In this document: piece after piece, positions 1,148-7,091 of the stretch
How the letters are laid out: every line of letters starts with the position of its first letter
Numbering within the stretch: position 1 is the first letter of the stretch
DNA from: Prasinococcaceae sp. CCMP 1430
Lineage: Eukaryota > Plantae > Prasinodermophyta
Direction: 5' to 3'
Assembly: GCA_013416795.1 (NCBI GenBank)
Contig: RQSC01000018.1
Coordinates: 326,170-338,697 of the forward strand
DNA: 12,528 bases
Translations under genes and position numbers: made by a program
The notes under the pieces: model-generated
What the model was told of the DNA's origin: nothing
Seen by the model: only the letters and a program-made list of their open reading frames with translations
Database searches by the model: none

Positions 1148-1753
1148 TCAGCGGCCATTGCTGCCATCGCTGCCACCGACGTCCGGCTCGGGTGACCCCT
1201 CTCCAACGGGCTGGGTGGCGCCCGTGTTCTTGTTGAGCTGCGCGCGCACCCGTCGCGCGAGAGGCATAGGGGGAGGAGCGTCGCGGCTCGGACGTGTGAG
1301 CGCCGAGCACGTCCGCCAACAACCCCACGGTGAAGCGCGCCTCCGTGCGGACACGCGCACGCGCGCACGCCTTCGCGCTCGCACCTCCACGCACGCGTCG
1401 ATCCACTCGGAGAAGACATCGATGGCCTCGGTCAGGTTGTTGGCGGTGGTCGTATACCGCGCCTCACACTGTGCGCGCGCGCGCATGCGTGAGTGAGTGA
1501 GTGAGCGCATGGCCCGTCAGCGCGCGCGGGCATTGGCCCCGGCCCCCACTCTCCTCCCCACCTGCCCCCTCCACGCGGGCGAATATGGCGCACGCACCCT
1601 CTCGCAAGCGAGCGTGGCCATCATCGCGTCCTTTTTGTCGATATAGCACTTGACGGAGTCCTTGTTGCCGCAGTACGGGCAGTCGAACACCTTGGCCACC
1701 TTGAGCTGCTTCCTCCCCTTGAACGGCTTCTTGGCGGACTTGCGCTTCCCCAT
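1148..1753 (-). CDS. ELF1: Transcription elongation factor 1 homolog (Elf1/ELOF1, C4 zinc ribbon), 3 exons
   Basis: Exons 1753-1598, 1468-1385 and 1237-1148 with GT-AG introns (AGG|GTGCGT, GAG|GTGCGA). Spliced protein: MGKRKSAKKPF...VFDCPYCGNKDSVKC...LACERCEARYTTTANNLTEAIDVFSEWIDACVELN..., with the Elf1 MGKRK start, the CxxC...CxxC zinc ribbon and the DVFSEWIDAC signature. Confidence 0.95.
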
Positions 1754-1819
1754 GGATGGCGCCGCGCCGCCGCCGCGCGCGCCGCGCGCGCCGCCCCCTC
1801 CAGCCGCCGCCTCCCCCCC

Positions 1820-1995
1820 NNNNNNNNNNNNNNNNNNNNNNNNNNNNNNNNNNNNNNNNNNNNNNNNNNNNNNNNNNNNNNNNNNNNNNNNNNNNNNNNN
1901 NNNNNNNNNNNNNNNNNNNNNNNNNNNNNNNNNNNNNNNNNNNNNNNNNNNNNNNNNNNNNNNNNNNNNNNNNNNNNNNNNNNNNNNNNNNNNNN
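1820..1995. other. Assembly gap (176 N)
   Basis: Run of N flanked by a C-run on the left and a G-run on the right. It probably contains the WD40 gene start and part of the shared promoter. Confidence 1.
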
Positions 1996-1996
1996 G

Positions 1997-3904
1997 GGGG
2001 CGCGCGGCCCGGCCGGGCTGGGCAGCGTGCGGCGCGCGGCACAGCGAGCGGCCGTGCCGCGTCTGTGCCTGCACGCCCACATGCGCGGGCACGGCGGGTG
2101 TGTCAACACCGTCGCGTGGGACGAGTGCGGGGAGGCGTTGCTGTCGGGGTCGGACGACCTGTCGCTTTGCGTCTGGCGCGCGGCGGACCTCACGCTGCGC
2201 GCGCGCGCGCGCACCGCGCACTCAAACAACATATTCTGCGCGCGCTTCGTGCCCGGCAGCGGCTGCGCACGCGCGGTCAGCTGCGCTGCCGACGGCGCGG
2301 TGCGCCTCGTGCACCTGCCTGCGGACGGCAGTAGCATCGGGAGCCCTGGCGGCATGCGAGGCGGCGATTCGAGCGACGAGCTCATCGCGCAGTGGGACGG
2401 CATGCTCATGAAGTTCGCATTCGCGCCCGGGAGCTCGGACGTGTTCGTGACGACGCAGCAAGACGGCGCCGTCCGCTGCTACGACCTGCGCGCGAGGCTG
2501 CGCGCAGCCAACGGCGCGGGGGCGCTGGCCTCGCGGCCGACGACGCGACGGCGCCACGTCAACCTCATCGGCGGAGCTGAAGAGGAGGGCACGGGGGGCG
2601 GCCTTCGCTCCATCTCGACGGTGTCGACCTCGGACGTGTGCTTCGACCCGATGCGCCCGGAGACGATGGCCGTCGCCTCGGACGCGGACCACGTCGTGCT
2701 GTACGACATACGGAGGGCGGGCGAGGTAGCGGCTATCCACCCGAGGGATTGGTCCAGTGGGAGCGGCGCAAGCGCAGACACCGGACTTGAGGGCCTCGCT
2801 GCCACCTCGGCGCGCATGCTGCAGCCGGCGGGGACGCTGGGCTGCCACACGGAGGGAGTGTCAGGCATAGACTATGACTCCCGGGGCAGGCTGCTCATCA
2901 GCTACCGCGGGGGGCACATGTACGTGGTAGACACCCGCGCTGCGGGACGCGGCGTCCCACAGCCGCGCGAGGACAGATGGGCGGGCGGTAGTGGCAGTGG
3001 CGGGCGCGAGACCGGAGGACCGAGTCCCGATAGTGGCGAAGGTGGAGGCGACGAGGACCCCCAAGAGGAGCTGGGCGGACCCGGAAACAACGACCGCGAA
3101 GGGGAGGACGAGGAGGACGAGGGTGACCTGCTTAGCACGGCTGCACTCGAGCGCATGGTGCGCGCAAGTGACGAGGCCACCATGGATGTCTTCGTGCGCC
3201 TCGTGCGAGAGCGACAGGCGAAGCTCAGGCGTCGGCAGCTCAACAAGTGCGAGACGCACTTCGAGTCCGAGCTCAAGGGGCATCTCAACCGACGCACCTT
3301 CCTCAAAGAGGCGCGGTTCTTCGGCGAGGGCGAGTACGCCGCCTGCGGCTCGGACTGCGGCCACCTCTTTGTTTATGAAACCCGCAGCGGCAAGCTGCTA
3401 CGCCGCATCCCGGCGGACTCGAGCATCGTGAACTGCGTCGCGCCGCACCCGCGAGGGCTGCCTATTTTGGCCGTCTCAGGCATCGACGACGATTGGCGCG
3501 TGCTCGGACCGGGCTCTGCGCACGCGGTGCCGCCACCTGAGGGGGTCTCGGTGGGTGATATTGCAGAGCTTAGCGCGTCGTCCGAGTCGCACCGCCTCGA
3601 GCGCGCGAGCGTGGCCACGCCGCTCGCGCAGCCCGGCGGTGCGGCGAGCTGTGACGCGGGCGTCGTGTTGGGCAGCCGCATCATCACTCGACGTCGCGCC
3701 GACATGAGCTTGCTCGGAGATTCGAGCGATGACTACGGTGGCTCGGACTCAATGGACGAGGACTACGACACGGACACGGACGAAGAGGAAGACGACGACG
3801 CAGACACAGACACAGACACGGAGTTGTCCGATCGCCCCGACGAGCACTCAGACGCCACAGACACTGAGAGCACCGGCACAGACACGAGTGCGGAAGACAC
3901 CTGA
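1997..3904 (+). CDS. WD40-repeat protein of the DCAF6/DCAF8/WDTC1 family (putative CUL4-DDB1 substrate receptor), 5' end in the gap
   Basis: The frame is open from the gap to TGA at 3902-3904. Family-type motifs: GHGGCVNTVAWDECGEALLSGSDD, HSNNIFCARFVP, YDLR/YDIR (WDxR-like), and the C-terminal block KGHLNRRTFLKEARFFG..AACGSDCGHLFVYE...ADSSIVNCVAPHP..PILAVSGID. Acidic insert and acidic tail. Confidence 0.85.
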   Translation, partial: GARGPAGLGSVRRAAQRAAVPRLCLHAHMRGHGGCVNTVAWDECGEALLSGSDDLSLCVWRAADLTLRARARTAHSNNIFCARFVPGSGCARAVSCAADGAVRLVHLPADGSSIGSPGGMRGGDSSDELIAQWDGMLMKFAFAPGSSDVFVTTQQDGAVRCYDLRARLRAANGAGALASRPTTRRRHVNLIGGAEEEGTGGGLRSISTVSTSDVCFDPMRPETMAVASDADHVVLYDIRRAGEVAAIHPRDWSSGSGASADTGLEGLAATSARMLQPAGTLGCHTEGVSGIDYDSRGRLLISYRGGHMYVVDTRAAGRGVPQPREDRWAGGSGSGGRETGGPSPDSGEGGGDEDPQEELGGPGNNDREGEDEEDEGDLLSTAALERMVRASDEATMDVFVRLVRERQAKLRRRQLNKCETHFESELKGHLNRRTFLKEARFFGEGEYAACGSDCGHLFVYETRSGKLLRRIPADSSIVNCVAPHPRGLPILAVSGIDDDWRVLGPGSAHAVPPPEGVSVGDIAELSASSESHRLERASVATPLAQPGGAASCDAGVVLGSRIITRRRADMSLLGDSSDDYGGSDSMDEDYDTDTDEEEDDDADTDTDTELSDRPDEHSDATDTESTGTDTSAEDT

Positions 3905-3937: not shown

Positions 3938-4001
3938 CAGAAGCCGGACGACGCAATGCACGTGCAGTGCGCTCTGGCGCTCCCTTTTGCGCGCCCGCGC
4001 C

Positions 4002-7000
4002 ATGCCATCGCGCGCGCTCTGCCAGCGCGCCGCTTTTTCCAGCCTGCCGTCCTCGCGAGTAGTGGCGGGGCTGTTGCGCGCCACTGCGGTGCCAGAGGCG
4101 GCCGCCGGCGCGCGGCGGGCGCGCCCAGGCGCCGTCGACCTCTTCTGCGCGGTGACGGGCTCGGGCGACCGCGCGCTCGCGGAGCGCCTGCTCACCGACG
4201 CGGGAGGCGACGCCAACGCCGCCGCGGACGCGTTCTTCCGCCGGGAAGGGGTGGAGGCCGCCAAGTCGGCCCTGCGCGGGGTGGGGGGCACGCTCGTCCT
4301 CGGCAGCACGCAGCGCGTGGTGAGGGGCTCCGGTATCGAGCGCGACGCTGAACGCGAGGCCAGCGCGCTTCGGGGGCTCGCTGCCCCGGGTCGCGGCGCG
4401 CCGGGAGCGCACGCCGACGCCCAGCGCGGATGGGCTCATGCCGTGCTGCCGGCGGAGCTGCGCGCCGCGGGATTCTCAGCGCTGCGTGAGTTCGCGGACG
4501 ACGTGGCCGAGCAGTGCGCCTCCGACGCCGCGGCTAACGACGCGCTGCTGCGCGCCGTCGCCGCGAAGTCCCCGCGTGCGCTCTACTGCGACTCGGCGTT
4601 TCCAGCCGGTGCGGCCTCCATCGACGGCGGCGGCAGCGACGGGGGAGAGCACCACACGCCACCACAGCCGCCGGCCTGCCGCTGCGGCGACGGCCAGCCG
4701 GCTGCATGCAAGCGCGTGAGCAAGGACGGCCCGAACCAGGGGAAGCTGTTCTACTGCTGCGCCCGTGAGCTCTCGGCGGAGCGCTGCGGGTTTTTCGCGT
4801 GGGCGCCTCGCGGCGCTCGCCCGAGCGGGCCGCAGCGCGCGCAGGCCGAGCGCGTGTGGCGGCGCTGTTCGCCGCCGCTGTTCAGGCTCGCAGCCGCGCG
4901 CGGGCCGTCCGCGGATGACGTGAGGCAGGGCTCGGTGGGGGACTGCTGGTTCGTCAGCGTGCTCGCTGTGCTCGCGACGCGTCCTTCGCTCGTGCGGATG
5001 CTGTTGCCTCAGCCCAGCGCCGCTGCTGCAGTGGGCGCGCACCGCGTGCGCCTTTTCATCGACGGTCACTGGCGCGAGCTTTTGCTTGACGACAAGTTTC
5101 CTTGCACAGTCGCGCAGGGGCACAGATTGGCCTACGCCAAGGCTGCTGGCGCAGAGGGCGACCAACTGTGGGTGCCCCTTCTCGAGAAGGCGTACGCGCG
5201 CGCCCACGGCAGCTATTCGGCCATCTCGGGGGGGTGGATGGCTGAGGCCATGCTGGACGTCACGGGGTGCAGCTGCGAATCCGTGTGGTTCCATGAGAAA
5301 GGCTTCGACTTTCAGCTCACGTGGGCTCGCATGCTGAGCTGGGCGGACAGTGGCTTCATGCTCGCCCTCGCCACCGGCGCGGGGGGCGCACAGCTACGCA
5401 AGACTGGGCTCGTCGGCGGCCACGCGTACAGCGTCCTGGAGGTGCGCGAAATCACCGACGCCAGGCCCTCGCGACAGACCAAACTGTCTGCGTTCTTCGC
5501 GGGATCCTCCAGTGAGCTGACCGGTAAGGGCAAGGAGAAGGCGGACGCAGCGGCGGGCGCGCGCGGCCGTGCGGACGCGGAGGTGCCCGAAGGCGGTGCG
5601 GTGGCGGCACGCGCAAAACGTATGCGGGTGGACGATGGGGTCGCAAGCACTGTCGACCTCACGACAGAGTCGGCCTCTGACGACGACTGCATCGTCGTCT
5701 CCGACACGAAAGCGGCACATGCTGGCGTTGTGGATGCACGCACCCGCGGTGATGCAGAGCTTGCGAAGGCGCTTCAACGCGAGGAGGGGCACGGCCTCGG
5801 AGATGCTGACGTGGTGTGCGTGGGGGTTGCGGAGGCGCCGGCGTATTCGTTCGAAGACGAGGTGCTTCGGCTCGTGTCGATACGCAATCCGCACGGAAGG
5901 GGCACCGGTTTCACTGGCGACTTCGGGCGGAAGAGTGCCGTGTGGAACGACAAGCTGCGCGCAGTGCTCGGGGGCGCATCCAGAACGGCCCGCAGCGATG
6001 GCAGCTTCTGGATGACGTACGAGGACGTCGTGAAGCATTTCGTCCTGCTTGACTGCTGCCGAGTGCCGCGTGGGCCCTTTTTCTCGGGCTCGTTCGACGT
6101 GACCATCGAGGCCGCGCGCACAGACTCGGGGTCGTCCCTGGTTCTGCGCGCGCTCGGCGGGTTGCGCGCGCCTGTCCAAGTCGCGTCTGTCCAGCCGACG
6201 AAGAGGAGCAGGATGGGCGAATCGCACTGGTACGTTCCTTCCGGGCTTGCGTACGGGGATGGCGCGGGCCAGGGCCTGACTGCCCGAGCCCACGGCGCGG
6301 ATCGCGTGGCATCGCACAGCGTCATGGTGTCTGAGGTCCCCGTGTGCATCTCGGCGTTCTCGCTGCACACGCGCGTTGGCAAGAGCGCATCCCTGGTGCT
6401 CCGCGTGGTCTCTCCAGTACCTCTCGCGGTGCGCGAGGTGCCGTGCGCGCCGCGCGAGCCGCTGTGTCTGGCGTTCGCGCGCGCCGCCATCGGCGAGGCG
6501 AGCGGCAACGGCCAAGGCGCTTCGTCCGGCGCGCGCGTGTCGAAACGGCACTACCTGGGCGCAGGCTCGATGCTCGCGTGCGTGGGCACGGCCGCCGACG
6601 GCGATGCCACGCTGGTGGCCGTCAACGCGTCGGCGTCCGAGCGCCTGTTTCTGCGCCTCGCGATCTCGGCCAAGTCCGGGTCGGTGAAGAGGGGGCCTGG
6701 CGCGCGGCAGCCCGTGCTGTGCGAGGACGGTTCGTGGGCCGTCTGCGTTCCCCCAGGGGCCTGCCGCGTCGTCGCCAGTGCGGCGGCTCTGTCGACGTGG
6801 GAGTGGGCGTTCGAGTACAGGTACCAGCGCGAGCGCGCTTCGGGCGGCGCGTGGCCCGCGCCGACGAACGACGGCGCGTGGGCGCAGGCGCCGGCGCCAG
6901 CGGCACATCGCCGCCGCCGAGGCCGCCGCCGGCTTCAGGCCCGAGGCGCGCGGGGGCTACCGGCGCGGCTGCGCGGGGGCCAGGTGCGTCGCGGCGTAGC

Positions 7001-7091
7001 GTGGCGGGCGCCAGAGGGAAGGGGGTTGGGGGGAGAGAGGAGGCGAGGGCGGGCCCCCCCCACACACACACACATCCCTTGTTGTACATAA
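4002..7091 (+). CDS. Calpain-family (CysPc, SOL/CAPN15-like) cysteine protease with UBA-like domain, GRF zinc finger and PIP/SIM/MIU-bearing insert
   Basis: Long ORF from ATG at 4002. CysPc motifs: YCDSAFP (4584), VWRR (4854), QGSVGDCW (catalytic Cys 4944-4946), WVPLLEKAYA..HGSY, GHAYSVL (His 5421-5423), IRNPHG (Asn 5886-5888), FWMTYED (6006). A domain-III/SOL-like region follows. The exact 3' end is uncertain. Confidence 0.9.
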   Translation: MPSRALCQRAAFSSLPSSRVVAGLLRATAVPEAAAGARRARPGAVDLFCAVTGSGDRALAERLLTDAGGDANAAADAFFRREGVEAAKSALRGVGGTLVLGSTQRVVRGSGIERDAEREASALRGLAAPGRGAPGAHADAQRGWAHAVLPAELRAAGFSALREFADDVAEQCASDAAANDALLRAVAAKSPRALYCDSAFPAGAASIDGGGSDGGEHHTPPQPPACRCGDGQPAACKRVSKDGPNQGKLFYCCARELSAERCGFFAWAPRGARPSGPQRAQAERVWRRCSPPLFRLAAARGPSADDVRQGSVGDCWFVSVLAVLATRPSLVRMLLPQPSAAAAVGAHRVRLFIDGHWRELLLDDKFPCTVAQGHRLAYAKAAGAEGDQLWVPLLEKAYARAHGSYSAISGGWMAEAMLDVTGCSCESVWFHEKGFDFQLTWARMLSWADSGFMLALATGAGGAQLRKTGLVGGHAYSVLEVREITDARPSRQTKLSAFFAGSSSELTGKGKEKADAAAGARGRADAEVPEGGAVAARAKRMRVDDGVASTVDLTTESASDDDCIVVSDTKAAHAGVVDARTRGDAELAKALQREEGHGLGDADVVCVGVAEAPAYSFEDEVLRLVSIRNPHGRGTGFTGDFGRKSAVWNDKLRAVLGGASRTARSDGSFWMTYEDVVKHFVLLDCCRVPRGPFFSGSFDVTIEAARTDSGSSLVLRALGGLRAPVQVASVQPTKRSRMGESHWYVPSGLAYGDGAGQGLTARAHGADRVASHSVMVSEVPVCISAFSLHTRVGKSASLVLRVVSPVPLAVREVPCAPREPLCLAFARAAIGEASGNGQGASSGARVSKRHYLGAGSMLACVGTAADGDATLVAVNASASERLFLRLAISAKSGSVKRGPGARQPVLCEDGSWAVCVPPGACRVVASAAALSTWEWAFEYRYQRERASGGAWPAPTNDGAWAQAPAPAAHRRRRGRRRLQARGARGLPARLRGGQVRRGVAWRAPEGRGLGGERRRGRAPPTHTHIPCCT
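4131..4238 (+). other. UBA-like (UBA_4-type) domain within the calpain
   Basis: AVDLFCAVTGSGDRALAERLLTDAGGDANAAADAFF fits the F..vTG......A..lL......l..A...FF pattern of the N-terminal UBA-like domains of p47, DCN1 and TDP2. Confidence 0.7.
4677..4802 (+). other. GRF-type zinc finger within the calpain
   Basis: CRCGDGQPAACKRVSKDGPNQGKLFYCCARELSAERCGFFAW matches CxC...V.K.GpN.Gr.Fy.C......C.FF.W. Confidence 0.85.

What the first reader, a model, noticed from the sequence alone, without database searches (positions are those of the whole stretch)
5460..5860. Roughly 130-aa motif-dense loop between catalytic His and Asn: PIP box, NLS, SIMs, MIU
His (5421) and Asn (5886) are 155 codons apart, versus about 24 residues in classical calpains. 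The insert holds QTKLSAFF (5475-5498), a perfect Qxx[LIM]xx[FY][FY] PCNA-binding box; KRMR (5616-5627), fitting K[KR]x[KR]; VDLT (5652-5663) and DDDCIVVSD (5679-5705), tandem SIM-like motifs spaced much as in the STUbL RNF4; DAELAKALQREE (5751-5786), MIU-like; and DVVCV (5808-5822), a third SIM-like motif. Several independent motifs in one loop beside the active site argue against chance. They suggest recruitment to, or activation by, PCNA and SUMO-ubiquitin hybrid chains.
Basis: partly seen in the sequence, partly recalled or inferred. Interest (0 to 1): 0.85.

Follow-up and report, generated by a model that had tools for sequence, protein, structure and literature searches.

The report
Calpain loop carrying PCNA/SUMO/ubiquitin docking motifs
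A green-alga protein-cutting enzyme (a calpain with a DNA-binding zinc finger) carries a real, translated 130-residue floppy loop whose first motif, a PCNA-clamp docking box, is conserved at the same spot in relatives across many eukaryotes, which suggests but does not prove an unrecognised family of DNA-replication-linked proteases.

Summary
The + strand ORF from 4002 encodes a UBA-like + GRF zinc finger + calpain protein of Prasinoderma coloniale (PRCOL_00006516). Its catalytic His (5421) and Asn (5886) are 155 codons apart, and every listed motif sits at the stated coordinates.

The segment is coding:
- The annotated gene model keeps it.
- A 57%-identical orthologue keeps it in frame.
- All 4 differences from a 98%-identical TARA contig inside it are synonymous.

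The new result is comparative. Among 137 family representatives (at most 50% identical), 51 carry Qxx[LIMV]xx[FY][FY] with Q at His+17 to +20 (48 at +18), against 0.07 expected. Conservation falls to background straight after the box. Downstream loop parts are enriched in basic clusters, acid-flanked SIM-like cores and MIU-like helices (0 of 1000 shuffles reach each count).

In this protein, the PIP box and MIU are individually improbable and conserved. The tandem SIMs are conserved only in the nearest orthologue. KRMR and DVVCV are weak.

Caveats: AlphaFold models the PIP stretch as semi-ordered (block pLDDT 79-85), so a structural or self-docked role is a live rival. The loop leaves the far end of the His/Asn hairpin, not the active site. 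No binding has been tested. I found no paper describing this. The scan noted the same gene only on this window.

The parts
4002..6898 (+). Coding sequence of the UBA-like + GRF zinc finger + calpain protein (Prasinoderma coloniale PRCOL_00006516). The window's ORF tail beyond about 6898 is out of frame relative to related contigs.
   Evidence: ORF and translation. Pfam domains. Identity to EukProt model P0227. 11-nt indel at 6898.
4131..4247 (+). UBA-like domain (Pfam UBA_4, aa 44-82)
   Evidence: E = 1.9e-7, 31.2 bits against a cutoff of 21.8. UBA_4 is found in 19 of 108 family members scanned.
4671..4805 (+). GRF zinc finger (aa 224-268)
   Evidence: Pfam E = 6e-11. Sequence hits to NEIL3 and APE2 GRF structures. 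Foldseek hits 5u6z, 7omk and 7jl5.
4845..5459 (+). Calpain protease core, first part (aa 282-486). It holds the catalytic Cys (tgc 4944-4946) and catalytic His (cac 5421-5423).
   Evidence: TM 0.77 to the calpain-3 core.
5460..5849 (+). Insert of about 130 aa that replaces the turn of the His/Asn beta-hairpin. Mostly disordered, Ala/Asp/Gly/Val-rich, net charge -7.
   Evidence: Unaligned to calpain models. pLDDT below 50 for model residues 296-368 and 373-399. Composition. All 4 differences from contig L002 are synonymous.
5475..5498 (+). PIP box QTKLSAFF (aa 492-499), with Q at His+18
   Evidence: Sequence. P = 0.0004 in shuffles. Same offset in 48 of 137 representatives, and 51 of 137 at His+17 to +20. 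Predicted short helix LSAFFA, block pLDDT 79-85.
5616..5627 (+). KRMR basic cluster, a weak candidate monopartite NLS
   Evidence: P = 0.09. The stretch is absent in P0002. Basic clusters are nevertheless enriched in family loops: 24 of 74 against 7.5 in shuffles.
5649..5705 (+). Tandem SIM-like motifs TVDLTTES and DDDCIVVSD (cores start at aa 551 and 563, 12 residues apart)
   Evidence: Sequence. Conserved as VIDLTGTSSDEDCVVV in the 57%-identical orthologue P0002. Family-wide SIM enrichment 13 against 3.3.
5751..5786 (+). MIU-like helix DAELAKALQREE
   Evidence: P = 0.004. Predicted isolated helix at model residues 369-382. LAxxLQ[RQ]xE is kept in P0002, P0004 (Amorphochlora), P0083 (Bigelowiella) and P0073. 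The key Ala and Leu-Gln of MIUs are taken from PMC2699339 and PMC5824887.
5808..5822 (+). DVVCV, a third SIM-like core (weak)
   Evidence: Not conserved in P0002. Similar D-VVC[LV]G occurs in distant members P0183 and P0068.
5850..6086 (+). Calpain protease core, second part (aa 617-695), with the return strand EVLRLVSI and catalytic Asn (aat 5886-5888)

Best explanation
The segment 5460-5860 is a translated, largely disordered expansion of the beta-hairpin turn between the strands that carry the catalytic His and Asn. The protein is a UBA-like + GRF zinc finger + calpain protease of the green alga Prasinoderma coloniale.

The segment is the long form of a loop that works as a cassette of short docking motifs in a large clade of GRF-calpains. 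That cassette has a positionally fixed PIP box six to seven residues after the His strand, usually followed by a basic patch, then acid-flanked SIM-like cores, and in some lineages an MIU or UIM helix.

The most likely mechanism has these steps:
- The PIP box tethers the protease to DNA-loaded PCNA.
- The GRF finger binds single-stranded DNA.
- The SIMs, the MIU and the N-terminal UBA-like domain hold it on SUMO- or ubiquitin-marked chromatin proteins.

Proteolysis would then be confined to replication or repair sites. This is functionally analogous to SPRTN, Wss1 and FAM111A, but built on a cysteine-protease scaffold.

Shown: the loop exists and is coding; the PIP box and MIU are conserved in a motif-specific way; motifs are enriched family-wide; the loop is predicted disordered with helical motifs.

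Inferred: every binding partner, nuclear localisation, and any effect on activity.
For: Coding status:
- The ORF is uninterrupted here, in TARA contig L002 (98-99.6% identical) and in orthologue L001/P0002.
- All 4 differences inside the insert are synonymous.
- The annotated model P0227 contains the insert.
- The Rhodosorus MMETSP transcript P0006 contains its PIP-bearing loop.

PIP box:
- 51 of 137 representatives carry it at His+17 to +20, against 0.07 expected from the rate elsewhere in the same proteins.
- The information profile is G+16, Q+18, K+20, hydrophobic +21, T/D, F/Y, F, then background.
- Typical forms such as QSKVTDFF and QKKLTSFF, followed by K/R runs, resemble classical PIP boxes (the resemblance to Cdt1, p21, Lig1 and UNG2 is from my own knowledge).

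Other loop motifs: SIM-like 13 against 3.3, MIU-like 6 against 0.1, basic clusters 24 against 7.5, each reached by 0 of 1000 shuffles.

Order of motifs: PIP, basic, SIM, SIM, MIU is preserved in P0002 despite indels.

Structure: the loop is disordered, with PIP and MIU as short helices.

Domain context: GRF in 93 of 108 members scanned. Recurrent ubiquitin or DNA-damage modules are UBA_4 (19), UIM/UIM_2 (5), UBM (2), RanBP zinc finger (2), PBZ (1) and CUE (1).

Precedent: a review states that all Plasmodium species have the Zf_GRF-CysPc configuration. The P. falciparum calpain is nucleolar, and the title of the cited Russo et al. [quoted passage not shown]
Against: - No binding data of any kind exist.
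- Two AlphaFold models place the motif in a fairly confident region. In the window protein the blocks holding TDARPSRQTK and LSAFFAGSSS average 85 and 79. In P0156 the corresponding blocks average 90 and 72. The motif may therefore be packed on the core rather than free.
- In the window's nearest named relatives the aromatic pair is degenerate while Q and the hydrophobic residue persist: Ostreococcus QTKLTEVY, chlorarachniophytes QLxIxxCF, P0159 QTKLQFGG. A pure PCNA-binding model does not predict this.
- The window's SIM cores are sub-canonical: VDLT has two hydrophobic residues and CIVV three. The ELM-like pattern is not significant in this loop.
- Pfam finds no ubiquitin-binding motif in the insert.
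- A predicted MIU in SPRTN turned out not to bind ubiquitin.
- About a third of the family, in a separate superclade, has short loops or a GNVSGF motif and no PIP box although it keeps the GRF finger.
Confidence: 0.55

Rival explanations
1. Structural or self-docked element. The conserved G-x-Q-x-K-hydrophobic-x-x-F-F stretch is an ordered extension of the His/Asn hairpin that packs on the PC2 lobe, for stability or as an intramolecular latch. Its match to the PIP consensus is fortuitous. The rest of the loop is a tolerated low-complexity expansion whose SIM and MIU look-alikes are lineage noise.
For: - Block pLDDT of 79-85 here and 72-90 in P0156 for the motif, against below 50-55 for the rest of the loop.
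- G at +16 and K at +20 are conserved although they are not part of the PIP consensus.
- Q and the hydrophobic residue persist where the aromatic pair is lost.
- Pfam sees no ubiquitin-binding motif in the insert.
Against: - Members with 24-30-residue hairpins fold, by homology, without the motif, so the core does not need it.
- All four PIP key positions are conserved, a T-D pair is frequent (24 of 52), and K/R clusters follow.
- Downstream enrichment of SIM, MIU and basic motifs over shuffles is not explained.
- High pLDDT is known for conditionally folding binding motifs (my own knowledge, not tested here).
Confidence: 0.25
2. IS1-like regulatory insert. Like insertion sequence 1 of calpain-3, the loop acts as an internal propeptide or occluding segment that is removed by autolysis to activate the enzyme. 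The motifs would be secondary.
For: - It is a long disordered insert inside the PC2 lobe of a calpain.
- The closest structural matches are calpain-3 cores.
- The IS1 precedent is from my own knowledge.
Against: - The insertion site differs. It is the hairpin turn after His, which by strand geometry lies distal to the cleft (inference).
- Nothing in the data speaks to autolysis.
- It does not explain the fixed PIP motif.
- It is not exclusive with the main explanation.
Confidence: 0.1
3. PIP degron. The box makes the protease itself a substrate of CRL4-Cdt2, so it is destroyed on chromatin-bound PCNA in S phase.
For: Many family members have Cdt1/p21-like QxxVTDFF boxes. 24 of 52 have [TS][DE] at positions 5-6.
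Against: - Only 3 of 52 combine T/S-D/E with a basic residue at +4.
- The window's QTKLSAFF-AGSS has neither. The degron rules are from my own knowledge (Havens and Walter).
Confidence: 0.04
4. Artefact. The segment is a retained intron or an annotation error, or the motifs are chance products of a low-complexity, GC-rich sequence.
For: - GC3 of the insert (0.72) is lower than in the flanking calpain exons (0.79-0.83).
- The genome is about 70% GC, so long spurious ORFs are common.
- KRMR and the ELM-like SIM are not significant.
Against: - It is in frame and stop-free in two species.
- It has homologous motif islands in P0002.
- 4 of 4 polymorphisms are synonymous.
- It is included in the annotated model.
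- The PIP box is conserved across 51 representatives.
Confidence: 0.03

Closest known systems
Zf_GRF-CysPc calpains (architecture catalogued by Zhao et al. 2012, PMC3563603; the 2026 review PMC13413365 lists Ostreococcus, Rhodosorus and Plasmodium)
   Same: A GRF zinc finger followed by a calpain core with a Cys/His/Asn triad. The window protein clusters with Ostreococcus, Rhodosorus, Amorphochlora and Bigelowiella members.
   Different: Term searches of these two papers gave only GRF architecture and taxon passages, and the review has no occurrence of PCNA or SUMO; I did not read them in full. This protein has the longest His-Asn loop seen (155 residues, family range 20-155).
SPRTN / Wss1 DNA-protein-crosslink metalloproteases
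   Same: A protease combined with a DNA-binding module and short motifs for PCNA (PIP), SUMO (SIM) and ubiquitin (UBZ, MIU) in disordered regions. The SPRTN schematic is quoted.
   Different: The catalytic fold is unrelated: a SprT/WLM zinc metalloprotease against a papain-like cysteine protease. No SHP or VIM p97 motif was found here. Here the motifs lie inside the catalytic domain's hairpin rather than in a C-terminal tail. This is an analogy only, not membership.
FAM111A/B (PIP-box serine proteases at replication forks)
   Same: A protease carrying a PIP box, and a proposed role at replication forks (my own knowledge).
   Different: FAM111A/B have a trypsin-like fold, an N-terminal PIP box, and no GRF, SIM or MIU arrangement.
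RNF4 tandem SIMs and RAP80 SIM+UIM readers of SUMO or hybrid SUMO-ubiquitin chains
   Same: Closely spaced acid-flanked SIM cores of the V/I-D-L-T type, 12 residues start to start, followed about 20 residues later by a ubiquitin-binding helix. The RNF4 and RAP80 details are from my own knowledge.
   Different: There are only two to three cores and they are sub-canonical. An MIU replaces the UIMs. Nothing shows chain-type specificity.
Calpain-3 IS1 insertion
   Same: A disordered insertion within the PC2 lobe of a calpain core. The calpain-3 core is the best structural match.
   Different: The insertion site and sequence differ. IS1 is an autolytic occluding peptide (my own knowledge). Here the insert carries conserved docking motifs.

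Membership tests
Calpain (Peptidase C2, CysPc) | Papain-like two-lobe core with a catalytic Cys, His and Asn | tested here: met
   Pfam PF00648 E = 2.4e-52. PDB calpain cores E = 1e-28 to 1e-21. C, H and N are aligned in 26 of the 27 GRF-calpains; P0029 has E at the Asn column. Foldseek TM 0.77 to calpain-3.
Zf_GRF-CysPc calpain subfamily | A GRF zinc finger immediately N-terminal to, or within the start of, the CysPc core | tested here: met
   PF06839 at aa 224-268. The same architecture appears in the closest homologues and in 93 of 108 scanned members.
Canonical PIP box | Qxx[LIMV]xx[FY][FY] sequence | tested here: met
   QTKLSAFF at aa 492-499. It occurs once in the protein, with P = 0.0004 in loop shuffles.
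Canonical PIP box | Located in an accessible, flexible segment | tested here: inconclusive
   It is predicted as a short helix next to the core, with block pLDDT of 79-85 here and 72-90 in P0156. No coordinates were available to check whether it is buried.
Canonical PIP box | Binds the PCNA hydrophobic pocket | not testable with these tools
   This needs a pull-down, ITC or a complex model with the alga's PCNA.
PIP degron (CRL4-Cdt2 substrates) | T-D at box positions 5-6 and a basic residue at +4 | tested here: not met
   The window has S-A at positions 5-6 and S at +4. Only 3 of 52 PIP-positive relatives meet both criteria.
SUMO-interacting motif | Hydrophobic core of the [VIL]x[VIL][VIL] or [VIL][VIL]x[VIL] type with an acidic or Ser/Thr flank | tested here: inconclusive
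   TVDL fits only the looser ELM-like core (P = 0.2). CIVV and VVCV are three-residue cores with acidic flanks (P = 0.024). The tandem pair is conserved in P0002. SIM-like cores are enriched in the family.
MIU (motif interacting with ubiquitin) | A single helix with hydrophobic-x-L-A-x-x-L-Q-x-x-acidic; the Ala and the Leu-Gln are critical | tested here: met
   ELAKALQREE has the Ala, the Leu-Gln and the acidic tail. The critical residues are from PMC2699339 and PMC5824887. It is predicted as a helix and conserved in 4 relatives. Ubiquitin binding itself is untested, and SPRTN's predicted MIU was negative.
Classical monopartite NLS | K[KR]x[KR] in an accessible region, conserved | tested here: inconclusive
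   KRMR is present but P = 0.09 and it is not conserved in position. Basic clusters are enriched in family loops.
SPRTN/Wss1 DPC proteases | SprT or WLM zinc metalloprotease domain (HExxH) | tested here: not met
   Pfam finds only UBA_4, GRF and Peptidase_C2. The resemblance is functional and architectural only.

The most novel reading that the evidence does not exclude
GRF-zinc-finger calpains may be an unrecognised, widespread class of PCNA-tethered cysteine proteases guided by SUMO and ubiquitin. They occur in green and red algae, chlorarachniophytes and many uncultured protists. Their docking cassette would be built into the catalytic His/Asn hairpin, and they would carry out replication- or repair-coupled proteolysis, for example of DNA-protein crosslinks. 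That would make them a third, independent invention of this activity after the SprT/WLM metalloproteases and the FAM111 serine proteases.
Probability: 0.3. Interest if true: 0.85.

Novelty: new variant of a known kind. Interest (0 to 1): 0.66.

Why it matters
Calpains are studied as cytosolic, calcium-switched proteases. The GRF-calpain branch has been catalogued only by domain architecture, and its function is unknown. Its one studied member, the essential nucleolar Plasmodium calpain, is linked to pre-S-phase development.

A PIP box conserved at a fixed position inside the catalytic domain gives this branch a concrete, testable hypothesis: proteolysis tethered to PCNA on DNA. The recurrent SIM, MIU/UIM, UBA, PBZ and UBM modules and the single-stranded-DNA-binding finger all fit that hypothesis.

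If it holds, it would add a cysteine-protease solution to replication-coupled protein clearance. It could also suggest how lineages handle DNA-protein crosslinks, and might offer leads for studying the parasite enzyme.

Tried and rejected
- Intron or artefact reading: rejected on the orthologue ORF, synonymous polymorphisms and the annotated model.
- dN/dS against P0002: not computed, because at 57% amino-acid identity synonymous sites are saturated. I used the 98%-identical TARA contig instead.
- Pfam scan of the insert alone: nothing found. UIM_2 hits in the P0144 and P0177 loops are below cutoff at E = 0.05.
- PIP-degron reading: rejected for this protein.
- p97-binding SHP and VIM motifs and APIM: none found.
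- My first, strict SIM definition (three [VIL] in a four-residue core) misses the window's own motifs. I therefore report them as sub-canonical.
- Literature searches for calpain with GRF, PIP box/PCNA or DNA-protein crosslink: only architecture catalogues turned up, and no functional link.
- Model coordinates are not exposed. I could not measure burial of the PIP residues or the distance from the loop to the active site.
Full report
**What is there.** The window is about 70% GC. Its longest + strand ORF (3987-7091, first ATG at 4002) encodes three Pfam domains:
- a UBA-like domain (UBA_4, aa 44-82);
- a GRF zinc finger (aa 224-268);
- a calpain Peptidase_C2 domain, matched in two pieces, aa 282-486 and aa 617-695.

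PDB calpain cores match in the same two pieces. Query residues 484 to 617 correspond to chain residues 265 to 275 of calpain-5, and calpain-1 has no gap at all there.

The catalytic residues are Cys (tgc 4944), His (cac 5421) and Asn (aat 5886). His and Asn are 155 codons apart. The non-GRF calpains recovered in the same search have spacings of 20-24.

**Organism and gene model.** The 90% cluster of the identical protein P0001 contains EukProt entry EP00793_Prasinoderma_coloniale_P003049 (PRCOL_00006516-RA, P0227). That annotated model is identical to the window's translation through the whole insert. The published annotation therefore treats 5460-5860 as exon.

**Is the segment coding?**
- TARA contig L002 is 98-99.6% identical to the window. 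It differs at four positions inside the insert, and all four are synonymous in this frame.
- The orthologue P0002 on contig L001 (57% amino-acid identity) carries the gene as one uninterrupted ORF. It has a homologous, shorter insert with a His-Asn spacing of 117.
- GC by codon position in the insert is 0.75/0.56/0.72. This is a weaker third-position bias than in the flanks but still coding-like. The other two frames contain stops.
- In Rhodosorus marinus, the MMETSP transcript-derived protein P0006 contains its own PIP-bearing loop.

I consider intron retention excluded for practical purposes. RNA-seq from this alga was not available to me.

**The family.** A search with residues 215-700 found GRF + calpain proteins in Ostreococcus tauri, Amorphochlora, Rhodosorus, Chytriomyces, Amoebophrya and many metagenomic eukaryotes. 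A profile search of 1.84 billion representatives returned 150 further members, each at most 50% identical to the others.

This Zf_GRF-CysPc architecture is already catalogued. Zhao et al. [quoted passage not shown] A 2026 review (PMC13413365) lists green algae, Rhodosorus and all Plasmodium species. In term searches of these papers I saw only architecture and taxon passages, and the review has no occurrence of PCNA or SUMO. Further searches combining calpain with PIP box/PCNA or with DNA-protein crosslink found no paper making the link.

**The central new result: the PIP box is a family feature.** The His-Asn spacing in the family ranges from 20 to 155, and the window has the longest. Among 137 representatives in which both catalytic motifs could be located:
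- 51 carry Qxx[LIMV]xx[FY][FY] starting 17-20 residues after the His, 48 of them at exactly +18;
- with the strict [LIM] form the count is 32;
- the same pattern occurs only 5 times in the other 112,158 positions of those proteins, giving an expectation of 0.07 for that window of positions.

A column-by-column information profile counted from the His shows peaks at G+16, Q+18, K+20, L/V/I+21, T+22, D+23, F/Y+24 and F+25. It falls to background (about 0.6 bits) from +26 onward.

Typical forms are GEQSKVTDFF, GQQKKLTSFF and GSQSKIRSFF, often followed by K/R runs such as SPDKKKSK, KKRKI or PRPKKKKQK. From my own knowledge these resemble the high-affinity boxes of Cdt1 and p21 and the PIP-plus-NLS heads of DNA ligase I and UNG2. 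The full PIP-degron signature (T/S-D/E plus a basic residue at +4) is present in only 3 of 52 and is absent here.

**The rest of the loop.** I took the variable part of 74 loops (His+26 to Asn-10; 2,620 residues in total) and compared motif counts with 1000 composition-preserving shuffles:

| Motif | Proteins observed | Shuffle mean | Shuffles reaching observed |
|---|---|---|---|
| Acid-flanked SIM-like cores | 13 | 3.3 | 0 of 1000 |
| LAxxLQxxE-type MIU | 6 | 0.1 | 0 of 1000 |
| Basic clusters | 24 | 7.5 | 0 of 1000 |

- SIM-like examples are SPEVEIVEP, DDEEVEVITK, DDDEVTIIEK, DDGDVVCLGD and TEVIDLDVDD.
- Two of the six MIU matches are doubtful. The four convincing ones are P0002, Amorphochlora P0004, Bigelowiella P0083 and P0073 (identity of P0083).
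- Two members have UIM-type helices instead, IERAVQLSL and IEHAIRMSL. These were read by eye; my UIM pattern caught only the second, alongside a doubtful P0026 match, and was not enriched (74 of 1000 shuffles). Their Pfam UIM_2 hits are below cutoff at E = 0.05.

Against P0002 the order PIP, basic patch, SIM (VIDLT), SIM (DEDCVVV), MIU (SDAELALALQREEE) is kept, while the linkers are reshaped by indels. The stretch holding the window's KRMR is missing in P0002, and its DVVCV has no counterpart there.

**Structure.** An AlphaFold2 model of aa 215-720 with a 108-sequence alignment has mean pLDDT 77.8 and pTM 0.72.
- The core is confident. Foldseek matches calpain-3 and calpain-1 cores (TM up to 0.77) and the GRF fingers of APE2 and NEIL3.
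- The His strand is model residues 261-271 and the return strand is 407-414. The insert therefore replaces the turn of that hairpin.
- Residues 296-368 and 373-399 have pLDDT below 50.
- Two short helices are predicted. Residues 281-286 are LSAFFA, the second half of the PIP box. Residues 369-382 are GDAELAKALQREEG, the MIU.
- The ten-residue blocks containing the PIP box average 85 and 79, so that part is not predicted to be disordered.
- A second model of a distant member with a PIP-NLS-SIM-SIM loop (P0156) shows the same picture: 90 for the G-x-Q-K-K block, 72 for the LTNFF helix block and 52-55 for the rest.

I had no coordinates, so I cannot say whether the hydrophobic residues are buried. 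This is the main reason I keep a structural or self-docked rival at about 0.25. High pLDDT is also seen for conditionally folding binding motifs, but that is my own knowledge and was not tested here.

The His and Asn lie at the near ends of two roughly ten-residue antiparallel strands. The loop therefore leaves the domain at the far end, not 'beside the active site'. This is inference from strand geometry.

**Phylogenetic spread.** I built a FastTree tree of 128 cores with the loop removed.
- One superclade of about 90 members contains all the PIP boxes, with at least 16 state changes on the tree.
- A second superclade has short hairpins or a conserved GNVSGF motif (Amoebophrya-like) and no PIP box, although 53 of 56 scanned PIP-negative members still have the GRF finger.
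- In the window's nearest clade the box is often degenerate: Ostreococcus QTKLTEVY, chlorarachniophytes QLxIxxCF, P0159 QTKLQFGG. Q and the hydrophobic residue are kept there while the aromatic pair is lost. This argues for some structural contribution of the first half of the motif and tempers the PCNA reading.

**Domain context.** Across 108 scanned members the accessory domains are GRF (93), UBA_4 (19), UIM/UIM_2 (5), UBM (2), RanBP-type zinc finger (2), zf-CCHC (2), PBZ (1), CUE (1) and Smr (1). These are ubiquitin-binding or DNA-damage-associated modules, consistent with a chromatin and ubiquitin theme.

The Plasmodium falciparum calpain, placed in this architecture by the review, is nucleolar. 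[quoted passage not shown] The title of Russo et al. [quoted passage not shown]

**Interpretation.** The best-supported reading (0.55) is that the loop is a docking cassette:
- The PIP box tethers the enzyme to PCNA.
- The GRF finger binds single-stranded DNA, as known for the APE2 and NEIL3 fingers (my own knowledge).
- The SIMs, the MIU and the UBA-like domain recognise SUMO- or ubiquitin-marked proteins.

Together these would confine proteolysis to replication or repair sites, by analogy with SPRTN. The SPRTN schematic, with PIP, SIM, UBZ and a predicted MIU, is quoted. The protein is not a member of that family, because it has no SprT or WLM domain.

A note of caution from the same preprint: SPRTN's predicted MIU does not bind ubiquitin. 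The window's SIM cores are also sub-canonical. The 'hybrid SUMO-ubiquitin chain' idea and 'activation by PCNA' are conjecture.

**Verdict.** It is strong for a conserved PIP-type motif, moderate for the MIU and tandem SIMs, and weak for the NLS and the third SIM. The claim about proximity to the active site is wrong in three dimensions.

The architecture class is known. The conserved motif cassette in the catalytic hairpin appears to be undescribed in the literature I could search. I rate it a new variant of a known kind, with interest 0.66.

Noticed in passing
window 6898-6999: Related TARA contigs (L002; proteins P0230, P0231) have 11 extra nucleotides at 6898 and read straight through to ...GARCVAA followed by a stop. 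In the window, CVAA plus TAG lies at 6985-6999 in a different frame from the main ORF. The annotated model P0227 bridges the two with an intron (...AFEYR|CVAA). The C-terminus CVAA looks like a CaaX prenylation box. The window ORF's tail from 6899 to 7091 is probably not real protein.
   Followed up: partly
window 4126: A 48-nt in-frame stretch is present in L002 and P0231 and is absent from the window. It encodes ...RRAAVAVRRMAGGAAG and holds the annotated start Met of P0227. This is either a strain indel or an assembly difference just upstream of the UBA-like domain.
   Followed up: partly
window about 4590-4860: The GRF finger lies between the conserved calpain N-terminal motif FxDxxFPxxxxSxDG and the WxR motif (family consensus). 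It is therefore embedded in the very start of the CysPc domain rather than simply prepended. This agrees with another first-stage note on this window.
   Followed up: partly
window 2027-3904 (+): The upstream neighbour ORF encodes a WD40-repeat protein (WD40 E = 4.5e-15). It corresponds to the 758-aa gene on TARA contig L002.
   Followed up: no
window 1501-2000: A 500-bp block at 46% GC sits in a window that is otherwise 64-77% GC. The alignment with L002 starts only at 1996.
   Followed up: no
proteins P0027, P0133, P0135, P0136, P0149, P0157, P0168, P0174 and others: A separate clade of GRF-calpains (Amoebophrya-like, probably alveolates) has a different, strongly conserved motif in the same His-Asn loop, F[FY]xxxhxxGxLGNVSGF. 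Its function is unknown.
   Followed up: no
family members outside the window (P0012, P0004, others in alignments A4 and A5): Individual GRF-calpains have acquired PBZ (poly-ADP-ribose-binding zinc finger), UBM, UIM, RanBP/NZF-type fingers, CUE and Smr domains. All are ubiquitin- or DNA-damage-linked modules.
   Followed up: partly
window 7055-7075: A C8 run followed by an (AC)n microsatellite (CCCCCCCCACACACACACACA) lies just downstream of the gene's stop region.
   Followed up: no
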